A stretch of 64,000 bases of DNA from Anolis carolinensis. Taxonomy: Eukaryota. The notes beneath the pieces are model-generated. The model saw only the letters and a list, made by a program, of their open reading frames with translations, made no database searches and was not told the origin of the DNA. The position numbers and the translations under genes are program-made. The number at the start of each line of letters is the position of its first letter. Position 1 is the first letter of the stretch. The DNA is taken from NCBI RefSeq assembly GCF_035594765.1, contig NC_085842.1, positions 130,957,036 to 131,021,035 of the forward strand, given 5' to 3'. Of the stretch, positions 9,187 to 26,672 are shown piece by piece.

Positions 9187-15044
<5,858 letters not shown>

Positions 15045-15169
15045 CTCCTCCCGCGGTGGAGTCCCGAGTCCAAAGAGCGAGAGAGACAGAGAGGCCCCTC
15101 CTCCGTGGCTGCCCCGCCCCTCTTCCTGCCTGCCTGCCTGCCTTAAAATGGTGGCGCTCCAGCAAAGAG

Positions 15170-15495
15170 TCCTGCCAACCTAGCAGTTCGAAAACATGCC
15201 AATGTGAGTAGATCAATGGCAGAAGAGCAGAAAAGGTAGAAAGAAAAGTTCAAGACTGAAGACTTCAAGTGTCTGAGGCCCCTTCCACACTGCTGAATAA
15301 AATCCCACATTATCTGCTTTGAACTTTGAACTTCCCGCTCCGGCGGGAAGGTAACGGCGCTCCATGCAGTCATGCCGGCCACATGACCTTGGAGGTGTCT
15401 ACGGACAACGCCGGCTCTTCGGCTTAGAAATGAGCACCAACCCCCAGAGTCAGACATGACTGGACTTAACGTCGGGGGGAAAACCTTTACCCTAC
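15170..15495 (+). mobile_element. 5'-truncated Sauria SINE interrupted by a 113-bp insertion
   Basis: Matches the 3' half of the SINE at 39234-39563, including the aaacctttacc tail. Interrupted at 15213-15332. Confidence 0.75.
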
Positions 15496-16478
15496 CAGCA
15501 AAGAGAGGGGAAGGGGAGGCTTCCTGTCCCTGCAGGCCTTTCCCTTCCCCTGCGAGTAGGCACCTTGGACAGCTATCAGTAGTTCTGGTAGTTCATGGGG
15601 CAGCTTGGGCCTTCCCTGCAGGTGTTTTGGACTTTAACTCCGCCATTCCTAACAGCCTCAGGCCCTTTCCTTTCCCCCCTCAGCCGCTTAAGCTGTAGCC
15701 AAGGTTAAAAAAAGGTTTATTCATTAATTTTAACTGGTTAACCAAATCCCCATGATAAGTCAACCAGAAGCAAAAATTAAACAAGTCCCTCCACAACTTC
15801 AGGCACTATCTCAAGCAAATTTTGATAATTTATTCACACTGTCATTAATTGACGCAATGGTCCCAAGAGCTAAAATATGGTCCGTGCCTCACCGTGGGGA
15901 CGAGAGCGACTGGTCTCGCTGAAGGGGCAAAGATGCAAAAAGTACTCCTTGAATCCAAAGTCAAAAGAGAGGGCGAGGAAGGACACCACAGAAAGTTGGA
16001 TCTTCAAATATTCCAGTTCAAAGCAGATAATGTGGGATTTTATTCAGCAGTGTGGAAGGGGCCTCAGACACTTGAAGTCTTCAGTCTTGAACTTTTCTTT
16101 CTACCTTTTCTGCTCTTCTGCCATTGAAGTTGCCAAGCTGGCTTCAGCTCCTTCACACATCTGAAAACAAGCCGTTGTGTGCCTGTTAGCCCCATAAGTA
16201 CATTTGAGATATTTGCAGAATAGTGTAAATATGTTCAAATATAAAACAATAAAAAGACAAAACTTTAAAAGCTGGGGAGGAGGGAGTGGCACCTGTACCT
16301 AGCACCTGAAAAATAAAATGCATTGAGCTCTCGTGCCCAAATTATATGAATACAGGTGCTGGGTGAACCAGTATGGGAAGATATCCCATCGTTTATTTTA
16401 TACCCGACCTTTCTCTGTACAGTTAAACAAAATATTCTTACAAAAGTGTAAAAATATTAAATGTTCAGTTAAAAAGTA

Positions 16479-16800
16479 CAGTAGTCTCTCACTTATCCAA
16501 CACTTGCTTATCCAATATTCTGGATTATCCAATGCATTTTTGTAGTCAATGTTTTTAATACATCGTGATATTTTGGTGCTAAATTTGTAAATACAGTAAT
16601 TACTACATACCATTACTGCATATTGAACTACCTTTTCTGTCAAATTTGTTGTATAACATGATGTTTGGTGCTTAATTTGTAAAATCATAACCTAATTTGA
16701 TGCTTAATAGGCTTCTCCTTAATCTCTCCTTATTATCCAACGTATTTGCTTATCCAATGTTCTGCCAGCCCGTTTATGTTGGATAAGTGAGACTCTACTG
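16479..16800. mobile_element. Tc1/mariner MITE, copy 2
   Basis: Same TIR family, TA TSD. Confidence 0.85.
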
Positions 16801-17046
16801 TACATAGGAAGCATAATCAGAGACAGTCATGTTGGCCATACCGCAAAATAAAACCAAATACACAAAAGAGCAATACCTTTATCAGACAACCAAGATGCAC
16901 AAAATACTTCATGGAAGCCTTTGAAGCTGCACTAGTCTCTTCATCAGGCAAGCAATGTTTTAAAAAACCACGACAAAAAAGTGATGTTATTGGGAGTCAC
17001 AGGTTTACACCTGATACAAAATTTAAAAAGCGTTGTCATCTCCCTC

Positions 17047-17329
17047 TCTGGGGGTTGGTGCTCATCTCCATTTCTAAGCCGAAGAGCCGGCGTTGTCCGT
17101 AGACACCTCCAAGGTCATGTGGCTGGCATGACTGCATGGAGCACCATTACCTTCCCGCCAGAGTGGTACCTATTGATCTACTCACATTTGCATGTTTTCG
17201 AACTGCTAGGCTGGCAGGAGCTGGGGCTAACAGCGGGTGCTCAAGCCGCTCCCAGGATTTGAAGCTGGGACCTTTCGATCTGCAAATTCAGCAGCTCAGC
17301 GCTTTAACGCACTTCGCCACCGGGGCTCC
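17047..17329 (-). mobile_element. Sauria SINE
   Basis: Reverse complement of the SINE at 39234; tRNA-like head ggagccccggtggcgaagtg with a B-box-like motif. Confidence 0.8.
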
Positions 17330-17960
17330 TTAGGAGAACACAATACAAATAATTTTAAATAAGTACAATATATTTATTTTTGACATACTGGTGGCTTGTG
17401 GTCCAACAAAACCTCCCATCGTGTTTGTATTTTTGAACTAACCATCTGTTAACCTTGCAGCCTCTTGTGAACAACGGTAGGCCCAGCAAGAGTTCAGTTC
17501 CAGGACATATGTATATGAGGAAAAAAACCTTAAATCATCAGGCCCCATATTATTAAATAGCAGCAACATTAATGTGCACAATTCAAAGTGTCCATGTCCA
17601 TGTTGCTTTCATTTAATAATAATACGCATGGTGATCTATGGTTGCTGGATATCATAGATGTGGATCCCGAATCTTTGTAGGGTTCATTGTAATTGTAAGC
17701 AACCTGCCTCCTCAGGAAGTGTATTTTCCAGCCACCTCTAAGCATTACATCCTTGTTGGCATACCATTTTTGTTTCATAATATTTACACTGCAGTAGACT
17801 TTTGGTACTTGCGTAAAGTAGTATGCTGCCCTTGATATGGACTTAGGATGAGTGAGGCTTGGTAGTGTTCCAGAACTGTAGTGTTCCTGTGACATCACTT
17901 CTTTCCTGTACCACAACGAGAATCTCCTTCCAGGGCACCATCACCAGCCTCTCCCTGCCC

Positions 17961-18707
17961 ATGTTGAGACGCAAGCAGCTGGTGCAGCAAGCACAGCTAG
18001 CAGAGCAATGTGGCCGATACAAGGACATGGCCGCTGCCATGAGGCAGCTTGTGGCTGAAGGAGGAGAGCCTTTAACCCAGGAAGAGAAGACTCTGCTTTC
18101 CAAGGCCTATACCTTCGTAATCCAGGAGCTTTGCTCTTCTTGGCGACGTCTAAAGAACTCAGTGGAGCAGGGAGTTGGAAAGGAGAAAGAACAAGCTGAA
18201 GCCTACCGTGAAACCATAAAAAGGGAACTGGAAACACAATGCTTGGAGATTCTTGGCCTCCTAGACCATGGGCTCCTAAAGCACTGCCATGAGACAGATA
18301 AGGGAAGCCGGGCCTTTTATCTGAAGATGAAAGGAGACAACTACCGCTACTTGGCAGAAGTGGCCCAGTCTGATACCAAGGACATGCTGGTGAAGTCTGC
18401 AGTGCAAGCCTACGAGGAGGCTCAGGAAATCAGTGAACGGCACCTGGAACCAACTCATCCACTGGCCCTGGCTGTGGCTCTGAATCACTCAGTCCTTCAT
18501 TATGAGGTTCTCAACAATGCTGAGAAAGCAACAAAACTAGCCAAGGCTGCTTTTGATAAGGCCATTGCTGGACTGGAGACCCTCAGCCTTGAGTTCTACA
18601 AGGAATCCACAGTCATCATGCAGCGCCTGAGGGACAACATTGTGCAGTGGACCAGTGACCAACATGAGGAAGTGGAGACCAACAGCAGAGAGGTTGAAGA
18701 TCAGTAG
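17961..18707 (+). CDS. Intronless divergent 14-3-3 family protein (gamma/eta-like), 248 aa; probable retrogene
   Basis: Uninterrupted ORF from ATG 17961 (cctgcccATG) to TAG 18705-18707. 14-3-3 motifs: QLAEQ..RY.DM, SSWR, FYLKMKGD.YRYLAE, PTHP...ALN.SV..YE, YK.ST.IMQ.LRDN...WTSD. The ORF-track start at 17859 is a GTG and is probably not the real start. Confidence 0.9.
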   Translation: MLRRKQLVQQAQLAEQCGRYKDMAAAMRQLVAEGGEPLTQEEKTLLSKAYTFVIQELCSSWRRLKNSVEQGVGKEKEQAEAYRETIKRELETQCLEILGLLDHGLLKHCHETDKGSRAFYLKMKGDNYRYLAEVAQSDTKDMLVKSAVQAYEEAQEISERHLEPTHPLALAVALNHSVLHYEVLNNAEKATKLAKAAFDKAIAGLETLSLEFYKESTVIMQRLRDNIVQWTSDQHEEVETNSREVEDQ

Positions 18708-18863
18708 CGGGGGTGCAGAGACATCCTGAAAGGAGCCATAGGCTCTAACAACAAGTTAGCAGTTACATGGATGTCATTAGCATTTGCTTTACTGCTATCC
18801 TGAGACCAAATCCATTCCTTATCTGACTAATGTGGGCACAGGTAACTCTAACTTCACAGCAGA

Positions 18864-18869
18864 AATAAA
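18864..18869 (+). terminator. Polyadenylation signal of the 14-3-3-like gene
   Basis: AATAAA about 157 nt after the stop, followed by T/GT-rich sequence. Confidence 0.6.
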
Positions 18870-20737
18870 AGCCCATTGCTGAACTATTTTCATTCTGTTG
18901 CTGTAAACATTGCAATCTTACAGGCTGTCATGCAGTGCTAGAGACAATGAGAAAGGCATATGTCAGATAAAAGTTAGGGAATAGTTAGAACTGGCAGAGG
19001 TCAGATTATGTAGTCACCAGCGTATTTGTGGTATGCATTTTTCACAGTGGAAAGCATTACAAGGGTAAACTACATTCAGACGTAACTTAGGTAGCTGATG
19101 TTGTAGGGTCTGTAAAAAGAAGACCTGCACCAAGTTTTAATGACAATTTGTAAAAGAATTACTGTAATAGATGAATTCTCTTACCACATTGTAAAATGGA
19201 TAAGTCAATGCTCAAGCCATCAACTGTTTCTAAATGTTCATTTCCCCCATTAAATATTAAATAGGTGCAAATCACTGTACAGCAATTCAGTATTTTCAAA
19301 TATAGTCTTACATTTTAGATAGATACATTTCTAATGGAATGTTTTTCATAACTCCCTGTCTTAAACAAGAATGCCTATTTTTCAACAGAGTGTTGAATGA
19401 CATCTTCTAAGTAGGAAAAATAACTAGCATTACATTATTTTATAGAATCAAGAATAGTATGAGTCCTTGATCAGCAACGAACTGTACTTGTAGCTAAATC
19501 TGTGGCTGCAAATATCATTTGGGTTTCATGAAAGCTGATATGAAGGCAAAATTAGAATTGTGCTCTTAATAGTACATAAGAATAAAGTACAGCCCCTATT
19601 AAGGCTGTAAAACTGACAACGCCCTGTTAGTCTGTCATGCCATTACTTAGCACATTTGGTGCCTCAATACTTAGTCCTTTGTTGTCACTAAAGCAGACTG
19701 CATTTTTTCCAACTGGGGAGATCTTTCTGAATCTCAAACCTACTTTTGTCATTAATAGTTATTAGAAACAATCCTGGAGAAACTGGGATCACACTGCTGA
19801 TTCAAAGGCTATGTGTGCATACAGATAAAAGAGAATGTTATGCTTCTACAAATATTTATTTTTGAAAAAGCAATCGTAACATAATTGAGAATGCTCCAGC
19901 ATTCACTTATGGCAGCAGAGGCAGAAACACTCTAAATAACAAACCAATAGTCCAAATCTTTATTTTTCGTCAGTGCTCTGCAATGACAAAAATCTGCAAT
20001 AGTATGTGCCAAGGAACCTGATTTCTGTATTTATAATTACCTACGCAATTGTGCATGAAATTTATTGGCATATTTTGACAAACTTAATTTTTTACTGATA
20101 ATTTGTTTTTTGGTATAAGAAGAGGTGGGAAAGAGCAAGAAGAAACTGGAGGTACATGTAGGGAAAAGGTACATAACTGAATGGGATGGGGTGGTGGCAG
20201 TGGCAAATATTCAAAAGAAGAGACAACTGCATAAGAAAAGCTACTCAACTACTGACAGCAAGACACCCTCTCACTCCTTGAAATAGATACATGCATGTTT
20301 TCCAGCATCTTCTGCTATCAGAGCTCTAAAATGGAAATATTCTGAGATTGAAAAATTGATATAAAACAAGAATAAAAATTAGGCCATGCCAGGGTTGTGT
20401 ACCCCTGCTCTACTGATAATTTTGGAAATTAAAGTATGCAGCAACTACAAGTCTCTTGATATACTGATAGTATATGCAGCTGCTATCATGGGGTGCAAAA
20501 GGAATTGTATCACTTTAAGAACCACAATCATAACTGTTACTTGAGGCTTGCAATATTCCAGCATATCTGGTCATCATGTTCCCAAGTAATGTGCTATGTC
20601 TACAGACCACAAAAATTCCAAACATTTAAGGCAATGCTCTAGTTGTAATTTCTTATTCTTAGTGAAGGGATTGTTGTGATAATTTTTCAGAAAGAAGGCT
20701 AAAAAGCAGAGTACACTTCATCAGTACCAATTATTTA

Positions 20738-21057
20738 CAGTAGAGTCTCACTTATCCAACATAAACGGGCTGGAACGTTGGATAAGCGAATATGTTGGAT
20801 AATAAGGAGGGATTAAGGAAAAGCCTATTATACATCAAATTAGGTTATGATTTTACAAATTAAGCACCAAAACATCATGTTTAACAACAAATTTGACAGA
20901 AAAAGTAGTTCAATTTGCAGTAATGCTATGTAGTAATTACTGTATTTATGAACTTAGCACCAAATTATCACGATGTACTGAAAACATTAACTACAAAAAT
21001 GCGTTGGATAATCCAGAACATTGGATAAGCGAGTGTTGGATAAGTGAGACTCTACTG
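20738..21057. mobile_element. Tc1/mariner MITE, copy 3 (opposite internal orientation)
   Basis: Same TIR family, TA TSD. Confidence 0.85.
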
Positions 21058-22288
21058 TAATATTTTTTGAAAATATTTCCCTAAAGTGGTACAGATTGTG
21101 TGAAACATGTTAACAGTCTGCCAATTTATCAAGTACATGTCATTTCAGACTGTGACACACAGCACTACCTCATCACATTCCCAAATGCAACCCTCTGCTT
21201 TTTTGGTGAAATCTGCTATATTTACAAGGAGGGTTACAACAGTCCTGTGTGATGGCTATTTTTTATTCTGGCTGAAGGTTAGTATGAAATGCTTTCAGCT
21301 TTGAGCCTCAGAAACACGTTTTATAAAGCTGATTCAGTTAGAAGAGGTAAAAGACCCTTAAACATTATCATGTTTGCCTAACCCCTTGGACGCAGAATTC
21401 AATAATATTATTTCTTCATTTATTCCAGCATACTGATTGTGAGATATACCAGGGATGTGAATGTACTGTCATTTCAAGAGACAATATATTCTAGCATATT
21501 GATTATGAGATGCACCATGACATAGATAACAGCTGCAGCATAAAAACTAAGATATATGCAATGGTCCAGCCAACATATACATGGATTTCAGCTATTCTGA
21601 AATAGTGGTCAGGGCATGTAGCGTCCAAGACAAATCCATTTGAGACTTGAAAGTGAAGAGTTTGTGGACATACATCTTTTAGGAAAGGAATAATATTAAA
21701 TTCAGGCATAATCCACTTTTCAAGAGTTATACAAATAAAAGTTCCATCATAACCTAGAGCACAGGTTTAGGGAGTACGTCTTCTGAAGATACTGGTCCAT
21801 CTCATATGCACTAGAAGAGAAACAGTCAATTTCTTTCAATTACAGTCTCATAAAAAACAGATGCTGAAGCAGAATGAATATGCTCCTAACATGATTACTT
21901 TCCGAAACAAGGACTTTTGTCTTCGCATTTGCAGTGTCAAAAGCTTATTTTGTTCCTGGCATACTGAGAGAAAGGAGATTTAGCCCTCCACCATGTTGCT
22001 GCAATGCCAGACTGAAAATTCCTGAGTTTTTACCAATGCTATACATTGCATTAGGTTTCAGCTAATAGAAATGACATCGATAACATTTGAAAAAGGAGTG
22101 AAAGAAGCTTTCTAAATGGGTTATAGTGTGCTTCAAGACTAAAGACTTTGCAAAATACTATTTCCAATAATGGCTGATGTGCCTGCAGACTTGTTTTCAC
22201 TTTAATCCTTGTTATTTTTCTACAAGGACAGCTTTAGCTGCTCATTTGAAGAAAGATCAAAGAGAAGATACATCTGAAACAGCAGATG

Positions 22289-25200
22289 TCACTTCACCAT
22301 TAGAGGAGGGCACCACAGTGTGTCAGGGTGGAGGAGGCAATGGACAGATTTGAATCTGCAAAGAGAAAGAGAAGAAACTGGCACATGATTTAAAACATTT
22401 TGATCTACAGGAATACAAATCCTGTAATGCAGTCATACTTTTGTAGTAAACCAAAGAAGGAAATACTGTTTTCTGCTCTTACGTTTTGATTTCTTGACCT
22501 AAAATCTCAAAGGAAACAAACCCTTCACTTGGAAGACTGATGTACCTACATACCGAGTTGGATCTTGCTGTACGCTGAATACTTCATCCACAGTCACGAC
22601 ATTACGTTTGTTCTCAGGACCACCATAACTCAAAGTAATCTGGAAAAAATATGTACAAACTCCAAAATTATACTTGGGCCTAAATAAGAAGCATAGAAAA
22701 GGAACATGAATAGAGCATGTTCATTAAATTAGCATGTCTCTGTGCTAAGCCAAGTTCCTTTCTCTCCAAAATGTCTGACATCTTCACAATATACTTTAAA
22801 ATTTTTGATCGTAGTTTCATTCTTCCTCACTTAAAAGTATCTCTATTATCTGTTGACTCTTTCACCCAATTTATGTTCTTCATCCACATAATACACTTTC
22901 CAATTCCCACTTTTATAATCCATTCTGATGTCAAGCTGTTTCTCAAGTTTTATTTGATAAATTGTATTCTAGGACTGTTTTATTCCAGAAGAGCAACTGA
23001 GGGGATATCTATGCCTTTTGTTCAAATACTTGTACTGATTTCACTAGTGTTTCTTTCTCTTGGACTCTCCATGATCACGGTGAACCTTCATTAGATGCAT
23101 CTGCATGTTTTTATTATATGCCCTAAACCCTTAGGGATAAATTCAACTAAAAGTCTACTCAAGCAGATCTATTTTCTGGAATGGCAGAAGGAAGAGGCAA
23201 TTCTTTGGCTTAAGTTGGATTTGTCCATTTGTCTATACCTGTTTGAGCACAGTGTCACCATGCAACCGCTGCAGGTTTTCCAGATGAGAGTGGAACAAAG
23301 GGCTGTGCAACAATTTCACTTCCAACAGGCCTTCAATTATATAGCCAATGGTGCAATCATCAGGGAGACGAATCCTTTCAGCGGTGCTAATGAAACTTCC
23401 CAAACTGTTCAAAGACAGGGTCAGAGAATGAAATCATCCTACTTTTTCTTAAGCTTTGGGTTTGGATGGGAAGCAGTTCCCCAAACTGCACTTACCTAGC
23501 CCAGGGACTCATCTTGAGGGCAAGGCCTCTGCTAATGCAGAATCCTGCACCTCCTGTGGCAAACCAGAACTTTGCAGTGGCCTAGCAAGATAAACAGAAA
23601 GTGGTCAGGAAACAAAGCATTCCTGTTCTGATCAGCTGACCATGTCACATTTGATCCCAGTAACAGATTAGAATGCATAGAACTCATATCTAAATGTGTC
23701 TAATTTGTATCATAATCTGATATAAATAGCAATCGATTCATGGTAAGCATTTATGGAGATAGCACAGATAAATACCAGTCTCCACCAAAACCTAGTGATA
23801 TCAGCAAAGAGATAACAAATCAAATTTTATTCTAGTGGGTGAATTTCTTATATGTATTCCCAACTCTTTCTACTGTTGCCATGAACTGAGTTCTGTAACA
23901 CATATAGGTAAGCATGTATAGTTCACAATTGTAATAATATAAAAGCTGCATCATAAAACAGTAAAGTCAGTCAATATAAATTTGTTTCTAGAGCCACTGA
24001 AAAAGCAGGTTAATAATGAACAGTATATATGTAAAGTTATGCAAAAATAGCCTAACCATCTGCAGACCAGTTTGTTTCTTGTTCCACAATGCAAAATGTA
24101 ATTATTTTCACTTGTTTCCAATAAGCTCCTTTCCTACAATATGCAGTTTTTAGTGTTTTGTATCTAAAACAATATCTACCCAAGAAATAACTATCAATTC
24201 TAAGAGTAGTAAATATATAACTATATCAACCTAATTCAGTTAGTAAAATGCACAACACCACACTACAAAAATGCTGGAAGATCTGGCTTGCCCAAGTTGC
24301 AATTGCTTGGCCCATGTGTGGCTGGACATCTTGGCAACAAACAAAGGAAAATAGGAATTTCTGCTGAAAGTAGGTAAGAATAGAGGGACAGTGCAATAAT
24401 CTGAGAAAATAAGAATCCAGTTAGAGAATATGCTTACTGATCCATCATTCCGGACATGGTCTGCTGCTTCAATAGGATGGTCTAGACTTGGTCTCCCTAT
24501 ATACACATCTTGGCTGTGTGAAAAAGCAGATAGCAGATTCAGGAGATTCTTCACATTCACATAATTGTCGTCATCCACATGACAAAACCACCTGCAGGAA
24601 AAGTAGACAAGAGACAAGTATAGAATAGGTTACACAGAATTAAGAGCTAGCTCTTTGTGTTATGTTCTCTTTGGAGGAGATCCTCACCTATTGGAATTAC
24701 AACAGCAAAACAGCAGATCTACTCACTGGGCCAAGAAGCGAAAGATTGAGAAGCTTTTCTCAACTGCCCAGAATTAAGACTGTATCTTACTTTTACTTAC
24801 TATTTTTTCCAGCCCAATGTGATTTTATTTCTTTTATGCTTATGGGAAGCATGCTAACTCACTGAAAGCCAAGAAAGGAGAATTTCAAGGTAAGTAACCA
24901 TGAAAATAGTGACTGCTACTTACTTTCGTCCAGATTCAAGAAATTTATCATATTCTACTGACATCTTGCAACACAGAGCTTGCCGGGTATGAACAGCTGA
25001 ACAGTTGGTATTGATGACACGGTCCCCTGTAAAATAAAGATGACAATTGGAGAATCAATATGATTTGTAAGAAAAAAAGGTGAAGTGAGGCTGAAATATG
25101 AGGAAGAGGTAGAGCATATTCATAAGTCAAATACATATAGCACAGCAGGATCCACCCATGCATCAATGGAGCCAAGTTATAAGTAACATGAAATGGAAAC

Positions 25201-26672
25201 ACCTAACATCAAACTTGAAAGACTTGATATGAAACCATGAAATTATAACTATTTAATAGTTACGTAGATTTCAGATGCCACAAAGAAAGCACACATGCAA
25301 GAATGGCACAAGTGTGAGTGGATGACGGAGTCACTGCATATGGGTGAAAACTTTGGGTTATGGTTAAAATGTGACATGTCTCAGCAATAACAAATATGCC
25401 ATGACTTCAAGAAATCTGGCAGGCGGCTCACCTGCTCTGAGACGTAGTTCACCATCTTCCCAGTCTGTGAATATAAATGTCTGTGGGAAGCACAAAAAAA
25501 CAAAGAAATGCCTCTTGAAATTTTGAAAATGGTACTAATACTGGTTTTGGTCAGAACAACCTTAAAAGTAAGATGTCCTTTCACTGTGTGCAGATTTAAT
25601 CAGCAGACTTTATTATTTGGTAAGATAAAGCTAAGTACATCATCCAATTTTGTAAATTCCACACACCCCAACCAAGCAAAAACTCCTCCTAAAATAAAAA
25701 CTGATAGACTTCATATCCCTTTCTTCTACCATCAAAAAACACTTAACAGATCTTTCAAATGAGAGAAACTCCTGGCTCTGTCAGAATGTCTCCTCATATA
25801 GATGAGATAGTGATATATGTAGATAAACGGGTACTCCCTGCTCACATACAATGAATAGAGAGAGAGAGCAAGTCTCTTAATACTTAACTGATGAGGGGTG
25901 GTGCAGCTTAAATGGCCGAACAACCTACCTTCACATTTTCTTTGCTTGAAACAGTTTGCTCTGGAGAGCTTAGCTTATTAAAACTCTGCCTAACATAATC
26001 ATGGGACCAGAAGAAGGGAAGCACAAAAATATCTTACACATCTCCAGGAAAAAAGAGATATTAACATTTGGGTGTGATAGTGATGCATGAAAAGGCACCC
26101 TGGTAGCAAGCTAAAAAATAATTTTACTGATAAACAAGTTTATACTTTAGTTTTCTGGGAAAGTGTATTCTTACCAGTTCCTTGGCCTGAGAAATCCAGG
26201 TTTGGAAGAGCAAGTTTAGTCTTGTTTTGTGATATTTCCTTGTTGTTTTCACAGCAATGAAGACATCGTTCTGTTCAAGCTTTTCCTTAGCAGTAACTCT
26301 GGTAGGCTCTATGTGGTCTTCCATCATGCTATTGAATTGATTAATTGGACTTCCATTCATCTTATCATTAGCTTTTAGTTTGGATCTCCGAGTATCTATG
26401 ACATAATTATTCCACTGTTTTACTAGGTCCTCTTTCATCAAGGGCACAATATTATTAGTCTCATCATCCAAACGATCAGTTGAGCTGGATTCCACTTGAA
26501 GTAGGGTATCATTTTTGCTGGAAACATTCAAAAGAAGTGGTAGACGTGGTTGTGGATAACTTCTGGATCTCCAACTGGCCTGAAATCTGGGAATTAGCAA
26601 GAGGAGAACTACACAGACAATAACAGAGAGCAGGAAACAGATCTTACTGAGCCTAATGCAAGAAAAGCTCAT
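22289..26672 (-). CDS. RFNG: Radical fringe O-fucosylpeptide beta-1,3-N-acetylglucosaminyltransferase, 8 coding exons, 402 aa
   Basis: Exons 26672-26175, 25480-25432, 25026-24924, 24591-24438, 23581-23496, 23404-23239, 22639-22554, 22355-22289 sum to 1209 nt. N-terminal signal-anchor, then [26 protein letters not shown] (DxD), [35 protein letters not shown]. Synteny with DCXR and GPS1 supports RFNG over LFNG/MFNG. Confidence 0.95.

What the first reader, a model, noticed from the sequence alone, without database searches (positions are those of the whole stretch)
17961..18707. Intact 14-3-3 paralog with a dismantled phosphopeptide-binding groove: candidate natural pseudo-14-3-3 or dominant-negative partner
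Seen: helix 3 reads LLSKAYTFVIQELCSSWR, where canonical isoforms have LLSVAYKNVVG(A/G)(R/Q)R. In zeta numbering the changes are K49->T (ACC 18111-18113), R56->C (TGC 18132-18134), V46K, N50F, G53Q and R55L. The hydrophobic face is also altered (G169A, L220R, L227Q). R127/Y128, N173, N224, W228, the LAE dimer motif, the R18-E89 pair and S58 are retained. Known: K49, R56, R127 and Y128 form the phosphate pocket, and engineered K49 and R56 mutants are standard binding-deficient or dominant-negative reagents. Inference: the protein is only roughly half identical to canonical isoforms by eye, yet has no stop or frameshift over 248 codons, a conserved core and its own AATAAA, which suggests selection. 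It could heterodimerise with normal 14-3-3s to give one-armed dimers, or bind different ligands through the new K46 and R220 charges.
Basis: partly seen in the sequence, partly recalled or inferred. Interest (0 to 1): 0.87.

Follow-up and report, generated by a model that had tools for sequence, protein, structure and literature searches.

The report
Lizard and snake pseudo-14-3-3 retrogene
Lizards and basal snakes have kept, under strong selection, an extra intronless copy of the signalling adaptor 14-3-3 gamma in which a phosphate-gripping arginine is always replaced by cysteine, the same change that cripples phosphopeptide binding in a human epilepsy mutation, so it probably does a job other than reading phosphorylation.

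Summary
Confirmed and extended. The 248-codon ORF (17961-18707, +; Anolis) is an intact, well-folding 14-3-3. Single-exon orthologues (71-94% identity; 17 compared, geckos to boas/pythons) sit between DCXR and RFNG in all nine other genomes fetched. Omega is about 0.19, so it is not a decaying retrocopy. It nests in the gamma/eta clade on a very long stem and lacks the YWHAG intron, so it is a retrogene. It is covered by spliced-RNA runs and missing from another RNA run; tissue and strand are unknown.

Corrections: the clade-wide lesion is R56C (17/17; R in 213/217 other 14-3-3s), plus N42T, N50L/F, G53Q/R, G169A, L220x and L227Q. K49T, K46 and R220 are lineage quirks; most orthologues keep K49 and have E46. 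The groove is remodelled, not decaying (omega 0.19).

R57C in human gamma is shown to cut phosphopeptide binding while keeping dimerisation (PMC12025923). A conserved heat-shock element plus CRE-like site suggests germ-cell or stress expression (inferred).

Best reading: a phospho-weak 14-3-3 with its own partners. No paper on it was found; RefSeq calls it 'gamma-like'. The only earlier scan note is on this same stretch.

The parts
17961..18707 (+). Single-exon CDS, 248 aa, squamate-specific 14-3-3 gamma-derived paralogue (RefSeq-type name '14-3-3 protein gamma-like')
18132..18134 (+). Cys at the R56 (zeta) / R57 (gamma) phosphate-binding position; invariant in 17/17 orthologues
   Evidence: effect of gamma R57C in PMC12025923
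18111..18113 (+). Thr at the K49 position; found only in anoles and geckos, K or R in the other orthologues
18090..18146 (+). Helix-3 groove face, remodelled: N42T, V46K (E in most), K49T, N50F, G53Q, A54E, R56C; R60 kept
18603..18650 (+). Helix-9 groove face, remodelled: D213E, L216V, L220R (H in most), L227Q; W228 kept
17862..17876 (+). Heat-shock-element-like site: two of three nGAAn units intact in Anolis; perfect GAAnnTTCnnGAA at the same place in 6 other genomic loci (twice in gecko) and nowhere else in those 20-kb loci; degenerate in snakes
   Evidence: HSE definition PMC11059408
17890..17897 (+). CRE-like octamer TGACATCA (perfect TGACGTCA in Varanus), about 20-25 bp behind the HSE; present in 10 of 11 orthologous promoters, altered in gecko
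18864..18869 (+). Proximal poly(A) signal AATAAA, positionally conserved in orthologues (AATAAT in Podarcis)
19168..19261 (+). Conserved non-coding block with ATTAAA at 19249 and 19256; candidate distal 3' end (RNA contigs end at 19267-19361)
17707..19361 (.). Region covered by contigs of three RNA runs (17946-19361; 17707-19325; 17707-19267); not covered in a fourth RNA run that does cover RFNG
14913..17707 (-). Inferred minus-strand GC..AG intron joining an alternative non-coding first exon from this promoter region to DCXR exon 2 (divergent or antisense transcription)
   Evidence: (loose ends at 17707)
9191..15045 (-). Upstream neighbour DCXR (L-xylulose reductase), head-to-head
22286..26672 (-). 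Downstream neighbour RFNG, tail-to-tail; its 3' UTR reaches down to about 19570-19900

Best explanation
A YWHAG (14-3-3 gamma) mRNA was retrotransposed into the DCXR-RFNG interval before the squamate radiation (shown: gamma/eta clade, intron absent, synteny; retroposition itself inferred). It went through a burst of amino-acid change and was then held under purifying selection (shown). It encodes a folded, probably dimeric 14-3-3 (model; interface mostly kept) with strongly reduced affinity for canonical pSer/pThr motifs (inferred from the invariant R56C, whose human equivalent is measured, plus bulky or polar residues on helices 3 and 9). Because the remodelled groove is itself conserved, it most likely acts as a largely phosphorylation-independent scaffold for its own restricted partner(s), in a restricted cell type driven by an HSF + CRE promoter, most plausibly male germ cells (inferred from motifs, retrogene status and patchy RNA presence; tissue not shown).
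For: Orthologues and synteny. Selection: NG86 0.06-0.23; GY omega 0.19, 2dlnL 348 vs omega=1. Tree: subfamily 100/100, inside gamma/eta 100/100, stem 1.33 changes per site. Gecko YWHAG has a 46-kb intron at codon 29-30 that the paralogue lacks. Fold: pLDDT 89.8, TM about 0.85, rmsd 1.9 A to gamma. R57C loses pTH binding, keeps about 30% at top concentrations for two other peptides, fails co-IP with TH and SLP76, dimerises normally (PMC12025923). Groove omega 0.187 equals the rest, 0.192, with new near-invariant residues T42, C56, L166, A169, E213, Q227. RNA present in three studies' runs, absent from another RNA run. Conserved HSE + CRE.
Against: No binding, proteomic or tissue data for this protein. 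Contigs give no strand, and two of them are joined to a minus-strand DCXR splice, so part of the signal may be antisense. Groove positions are not significantly more changed than others (11/29 vs 24/95, p=0.24), and many groove residues also pack the fold, so their conservation need not mean a ligand. Several groove positions vary among orthologues (46, 49, 128, 176, 220, 224), which is unusual for a tight conserved interface. The HSE is degenerate in Anolis and snakes.
Confidence: 0.45

Rival explanations
1. Natural attenuator: it heterodimerises with canonical 14-3-3s, giving one-armed dimers that weaken bivalent clients (RAF, CDC25, kinases) in the cells that express it.
For: The dimer-face codons are the most constrained class (omega 0.134; 14/20 invariant; L12, A13, Q15, R18, D21, S58, Y82, E89 kept). 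Human gamma R57C dimerises with wild type as well as wild type does, and ligand-groove missense variants are suggested to act dominant-negatively (PMC12394150).
Against: The interface also carries fixed changes (A16C, K9A, V61R, M78Q, K85T which removes the D21-K85 pair) that could favour homodimers. A pure poison subunit would not need a constrained groove.
Confidence: 0.2
2. Altered-specificity phospho-reader: it still binds a narrow set of phosphorylated or acidic motifs using K49 (where kept), R60, K120, R127 and Y/F128.
For: R127 and R60 are invariant, K49 is kept in most lineages, N173/E180/W228 are invariant; R57C gamma retains partial binding at high peptide concentration.
Against: K49 was lost in anoles and geckos, Y128 became F in 7/17, N224 became S or Y in 5/17, and E46 puts an acid next to the pocket; each of these is invariant in canonical isoforms.
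Confidence: 0.17
3. HSF-driven holdase: it specialised in the phosphorylation-independent chaperone (anti-aggregation) activity reported for 14-3-3 zeta (own knowledge; the papers were not held) and is induced by heat or in heat-sensitive germ cells.
For: A perfect three-unit HSE is kept just upstream in monitor, alligator lizard, lacertid, cordylid, skink and gecko, with variable spacer letters, and is duplicated in the gecko. The phospho-pocket is dispensable for this role.
Against: The HSE is degenerate in Anolis and snakes; HSF1/HSF2 also act in unstressed spermatogenesis, so an HSE does not imply heat induction; no heat-shock data were examined.
Confidence: 0.15
4. Decaying or non-functional retrocopy, or an ORF kept only because it overlaps an antisense DCXR exon.
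For: Intronless; overlapping minus-strand transcript; faster change on the anole stem (branch omega about 0.36).
Against: Intact in every species retrieved, omega 0.19 over dS above 3; the antisense strand has 5-18 stops per frame; A. carolinensis vs A. sagrei omega 0.13.
Confidence: 0.02

Closest known systems
14-3-3 gamma (YWHAG), vertebrate
   Same: Fold, 52-54% identity, gamma/eta-type signatures (R4-x-Q6, C-S-E-T-x-Y-E-S in helix 4-5 loop, W-T-S-D-Q tail), most dimer-face residues
   Different: Intronless, other locus, about half of residues changed although gamma itself is nearly invariant; R57 to C fixed; helix 3 and 9 groove faces rebuilt; apparently restricted expression
Human YWHAG p.Arg57Cys (DEE56 hotspot; PMC12025923, PMC12394150)
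   Same: Identical substitution at the identical position
   Different: In humans a de novo disease allele of the canonical gene; here fixed in a separate gene across squamates, with many further groove changes
Cryptosporidium parvum Cp14a and Cp14b (PMC3154893)
   Same: Natural divergent 14-3-3 paralogues whose phosphopeptide pocket is thought to be disabled or occluded
   Different: Protist, independent origin; Cp14a has a disoriented but present RRY triad and Cp14b an auto-inhibited degenerate dimer; here the triad itself is mutated, in a vertebrate
14-3-3 sigma (SFN)
   Same: Intronless vertebrate 14-3-3 with tissue-restricted expression (own knowledge)
   Different: Sigma keeps K49/R56/R127/Y128 and binds phosphopeptides; it scores lowest of the human isoforms hit (215 vs 246 bits) and a sigma-like row falls outside the clade holding this gene
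Mammalian 14-3-3 processed pseudogenes / retrocopies
   Same: Intronless origin from an mRNA
   Different: Those decay (own knowledge); this one has omega 0.19 across the squamate tree

Membership tests
14-3-3 family (PF00244) | Full-length match above the curated cut-off | tested here: met
   247.8 bits vs cut-off 33.2, profile 2-223/223
14-3-3 family (PF00244) | All-helical 14-3-3 fold | tested here: met
   AF2 pLDDT 89.8, nine helical elements; Foldseek TM 0.85-0.92, rmsd 1.9 A to gamma; a prediction, not a solved structure
14-3-3 family (PF00244) | Dimerisation through helices 1-4 | not testable with these tools
   Sequence only: L12, A13, Q15, R18, D21, S58, Y82, E89 kept; A16C, K85T, V61R changed. 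No multimer prediction available.
Canonical phosphopeptide-binding 14-3-3 | K49-R56-R127-Y128 phosphate pocket | tested here: not met
   R56 is C in 17/17; K49 is T in 4/17 including this gene; Y128 is F in 7/17; R127 kept
Canonical phosphopeptide-binding 14-3-3 | Hydrophobic groove face V46, G169, L172, V176, L216, I217, L220, L227 | tested here: not met
   V46E/K, G169A, L216V, L220H/R/N/C/Q, L227Q; L172 and I217 kept
Canonical phosphopeptide-binding 14-3-3 | Backbone-holding N173, E180, N224, W228 | tested here: inconclusive
   N173, E180, W228 invariant; N224 kept here but S or Y in 5/17
Canonical phosphopeptide-binding 14-3-3 | Measured binding of mode I/II phosphopeptides | not testable with these tools
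   Only the proxy of human gamma R57C
One of the seven vertebrate isoforms (orthologue of YWHAG or YWHAH) | Orthology: two-exon structure, own locus, above 90% identity | tested here: not met
   52% to gecko YWHAG, which has its own locus with a 46-kb intron; separate clade
Functional retrogene of YWHAG/YWHAH | Parental intron missing from a CDS that spans the junction | tested here: met
   CDS matches both parental exons without a break
Functional retrogene of YWHAG/YWHAH | Poly(A) tail remnant, target-site duplication, parental UTR similarity | tested here: inconclusive
   None found; expected to be erased at this age
Functional retrogene of YWHAG/YWHAH | Parent is gamma rather than eta | tested here: inconclusive
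   Gamma scores best and is sister in the tree only at 88/32; no tetrapod eta row was available
Functional retrogene of YWHAG/YWHAH | Purifying selection and transcription | tested here: met
   omega 0.19, p 1e-77; RNA contigs in runs with spliced RFNG, strand not shown
Testis-specific (CREM/HSF-driven) retrogene | Expression restricted to male germ cells | not testable with these tools
   Run tissues are coded; only presence in three and absence in one RNA run and promoter motifs

The most novel reading that the evidence does not exclude
An undescribed extra vertebrate 14-3-3 isoform, specific to squamates, that is a true pseudo-reader: it fixed the human disease substitution R57C before the squamate radiation, no longer reads phosphoserine, and either binds a new class of partner or tunes canonical 14-3-3 dimers in germ cells under HSF/CREM control.
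Probability: 0.6. Interest if true: 0.72.

Novelty: new variant of a known kind. Interest (0 to 1): 0.6.

Why it matters
14-3-3 proteins are among the most conserved eukaryotic adaptors, and R56 is kept in 98% of even the most divergent members fetched here. A vertebrate paralogue that fixed R56C and has been kept by selection across lizards and basal snakes would be a natural pseudo-14-3-3. It gives a direct handle on two open questions: what 14-3-3 proteins do without phosphopeptide binding (scaffold, chaperone), and whether one-armed heterodimers are used as regulators in vivo. It also offers an evolutionary comparison for the YWHAG R57C encephalopathy allele. It is hidden in databases under the label 'gamma-like'.

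Tried and rejected
Literature: searches for the accessions and names, for 14-3-3 with Anolis/YWHAG/squamate/retrogene terms, and for run accessions found no paper on this gene; subscription journals are not covered. Outgroups: a profile search, a full HMMER scan of 50% representatives and the ESM Atlas gave no non-squamate orthologue, but the word-based search also missed canonical human gamma, so this is not absence. An attempt to reach turtle, crocodile or bird DCXR loci through DCXR exon 2 returned only Anolis, so the interval was not inspected outside squamates. Dating by dS failed: synonymous sites against gecko YWHAG are near saturation (dS 2.1-3.6 or undefined). Spliced models (DCXR, RFNG, YWHAG) were used exon by exon; the joined step was left out. 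Tissue of the RNA runs could not be decoded, and skink and Podarcis Logan contigs (L009-L014) run through the promoter and may be DNA, so they were not counted as expression. Rejected: pseudogene (omega), RFNG 3' UTR read-through as the source of RNA (a run with RFNG has nothing over the gene; coverage gap between), sigma origin (tree, scores), an antisense coding constraint (many stops). Two papers on 14-3-3 chaperone activity were not held.

Full report
Observation. The window encodes an uninterrupted 248-aa 14-3-3 at 17961-18707 (+). The identical sequence is in the protein collection, in a cluster with Anolis carolinensis and A. sagrei entries named '14-3-3 protein gamma(-A)-like', so the window is an Anolis genome. 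It is 50-54% identical to human isoforms, with gamma (246 bits) ahead of eta (239), zeta (227), beta (222), theta (219) and sigma (215). AlphaFold2 gives a confident all-helical model (pLDDT 89.8) that superposes on 14-3-3 gamma at 1.9 A.

Orthologues and synteny. Searches returned a tight group at 71-94% identity, then a gap to 52%. With cluster members it includes anoles, Varanus, Elgaria, Rhineura, Podarcis, Zootoca, Lacerta, Hemicordylus, Lerista, Tiliqua, Euleptes, Sphaerodactylus, Python and Candoia. All nine genomic loci fetched show a single-exon CDS between DCXR (head-to-head) and RFNG (tail-to-tail), with RAC3-like beyond DCXR where in range. Geckos are included, so the gene predates the squamate crown (about 190-200 My, own knowledge). 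No non-squamate orthologue appeared, but these searches are incomplete and the outgroup interval could not be fetched. No colubroid snake, Pogona, Sceloporus or Eublepharis sequence appeared either; this is unresolved.

Selection. Pairwise NG86 dN/dS is 0.06-0.23. A codon model on 11 sequences gives omega 0.19 and rejects omega=1 with 2dlnL 348. The anole stem is faster (dN 0.074, omega about 0.36 by least squares), but the two anoles still differ at omega 0.13. The antisense strand is full of stops.

Origin. In a tree of 49 rows the subfamily is one clade (100/100) inside the gamma/eta clade (100/100), on a stem of 1.33 changes per site against 0.05-0.3 within the subfamily; sisterhood with tetrapod gamma is weak (88/32) and no tetrapod eta row was available (labels). 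Gecko YWHAG is split by a 46-kb intron at codon 29-30, whereas the paralogue runs through that junction, which points to retroposition. No poly(A) remnant or UTR similarity survives. Synonymous sites against YWHAG are near saturation, compared with dS about 0.8-1.5 between gecko and other orthologues, so the copy may be well older than the squamate crown. The pattern is burst then constraint, as expected of neofunctionalisation (inference).

The groove. Across 17 orthologues (zeta numbering): R56C 17/17; N42T 16; V46E 14, K 3; K49 K 12, T 4, R 1; N50 L or F; G53 Q 14, R 3; I166L, G169A, D213E 17/17; L216V 15; L220 H 10, R 3, other 4; L227Q 16; Y128 Y 10, F 7; N224 N 12, S 4, Y 1. Invariant and canonical: R60, F117, M121, D124, R127, P165, L172, N173, Y179, E180, I217, D223, W228. 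So the walls on helices 3 and 9 were rebuilt while the floor on helices 5 and 7 was kept. Among 217 other 14-3-3 sequences fetched, many of them the most divergent representatives, R56 is kept in 213. Groove codons have omega 0.187, dimer-face codons 0.134 and the rest 0.192 (my residue classes come from knowledge of zeta structures, and the classes are small). The groove was not hit significantly harder than the rest on the stem (11/29 vs 24/95; p=0.24).

What R56C does. The same substitution in human gamma (R57C) is a recurrent encephalopathy variant (PMC12394150). Measured effects: strongly reduced binding of three phosphopeptides, none for pTH, about 30% at top concentrations for two others; failed co-IP with TH and SLP76; normal expression; normal dimerisation with wild type; more nuclear localisation (PMC12025923). 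With E/K46, Q53, A169, H/R220 and Q227 added, I infer weak binding both of canonical phosphomotifs and of hydrophobic ligands such as R18. This is a proxy; the squamate protein has not been assayed.

Expression. Twenty runs from six studies hold the stretch; none is on record as RNA. I laid four. All four show the spliced RFNG junction 22355-22554, so they are RNA, and there is no coverage at 17347-17545. Three runs from three studies have long contigs over the whole ORF (17946-19361; 17707-18807 plus 18809-19325; 17707-19267). The fourth has RFNG and nothing between 17347 and 19336, which suggests restricted expression, although contigs cannot prove absence. Strand is not given. One contig starts 15 nt before the ATG, and the ends lie near conserved poly(A) signals (18864; 19249/19256), which fits a sense mRNA. 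In two runs the contig continues from 17707 into window 14911 and below, which reads as a minus-strand GC..AG splice into DCXR exon 2, with an in-frame TGA just before the junction. The promoter region thus also yields a divergent or antisense non-coding DCXR first exon, and part of the signal may be antisense.

Promoter. About 110 to 60 bp upstream of the ATG all orthologues share a block with an HSE-like element and a CRE-like octamer. A perfect GAAnnTTCnnGAA, the typical HSE (PMC11059408), occurs at this site in six of nine 20-kb loci, twice in the gecko, and nowhere else in them; spacer letters vary while the triplets stay. It is degenerate in anoles and snakes. TGAC(A/G)TCA is present in 10 of 11. 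HSF1 and HSF2 act in unstressed spermatogenesis (PMC11570959), CRE sites typify CREM-driven spermatid genes, and retrogenes are often testis-expressed (both own knowledge). Germ-cell expression is therefore my best guess (about 0.65), with heat induction as the alternative.

Mechanism. Best (0.45): a folded, dimeric, phospho-weak 14-3-3 acting as a scaffold for its own partner(s). Rivals: heterodimer attenuator (0.2), narrowed phospho-reader (0.17), HSF-driven holdase (0.15), non-functional (0.02). Shown: sequence changes, orthology, selection, intron loss, RNA presence, promoter conservation. Inferred: loss of phospho-binding, dimer state, tissue, partners.

Comparison and novelty. It is a 14-3-3 by profile and fold but fails the canonical pocket test and is not any of the seven isoforms. 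The nearest functional precedents are Cryptosporidium Cp14a/Cp14b (PMC3154893). I found no paper describing this squamate gene; databases list it only by automatic name. An earlier first-stage note on this same stretch suggested an old intronless gamma/eta derivative, which I tested and confirm. Verdict: new variant of a known kind; interest 0.6.

Noticed in passing
window 17707/17708 to 14912 (-): RNA contigs in two studies join the 14-3-3 promoter region to DCXR exon 2 through an apparent GC..AG intron; the alternative exon has an in-frame TGA before the junction, so it would give a DCXR RNA without the first coding exon (Rossmann motif start). The donor context is conserved in A. sagrei (L002 about 9735).
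   Followed up: partly
L001:2229-20744 (Varanus): One called gene of 628 aa fuses RFNG (Fringe) and DCXR across the 14-3-3 locus; either an annotation artefact or a read-through transcript.
   Followed up: no
L015 about 9855-9900 (Sphaerodactylus): The HSE is tandemly duplicated into a longer nGAAn array while the CRE-like octamer is altered, the reverse of anoles and snakes, which keep the CRE and erode the HSE.
   Followed up: partly
window 17961-18707, anole stem branch: Anoles show the fastest protein change in the subfamily (branch 0.23 in the tree; omega about 0.36), including E46K, K49T and position 220 R; A. sagrei also has N224Y.
   Followed up: partly
window 18009-18014 (codons 17-18): A16C and E17G are invariant in all orthologues at the dimer-face helix 1-2 turn; with C56, C94 and C109 the protein has four invariant cysteines, so redox or disulfide regulation is conceivable.
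   Followed up: no
window 18383, 18420, 18687: Coding differences in RNA contigs: D141E (three runs), A154T (one run; A154 is otherwise invariant in the alignment), R243G (two runs).
   Followed up: no
   Followed up: no
P0017 (Branchiostoma lanceolatum, 514 aa): A protein with two tandem 14-3-3 domains was the second hit among 50% representatives; possibly a fused gene model.
   Followed up: no
window 17035-17329, 15143-15496, about 20730-21060: Repeat copies (SINE-like by my recollection of the Sauria SINE, not tested) between the genes; they attract thousands of unrelated contigs.
   Followed up: no
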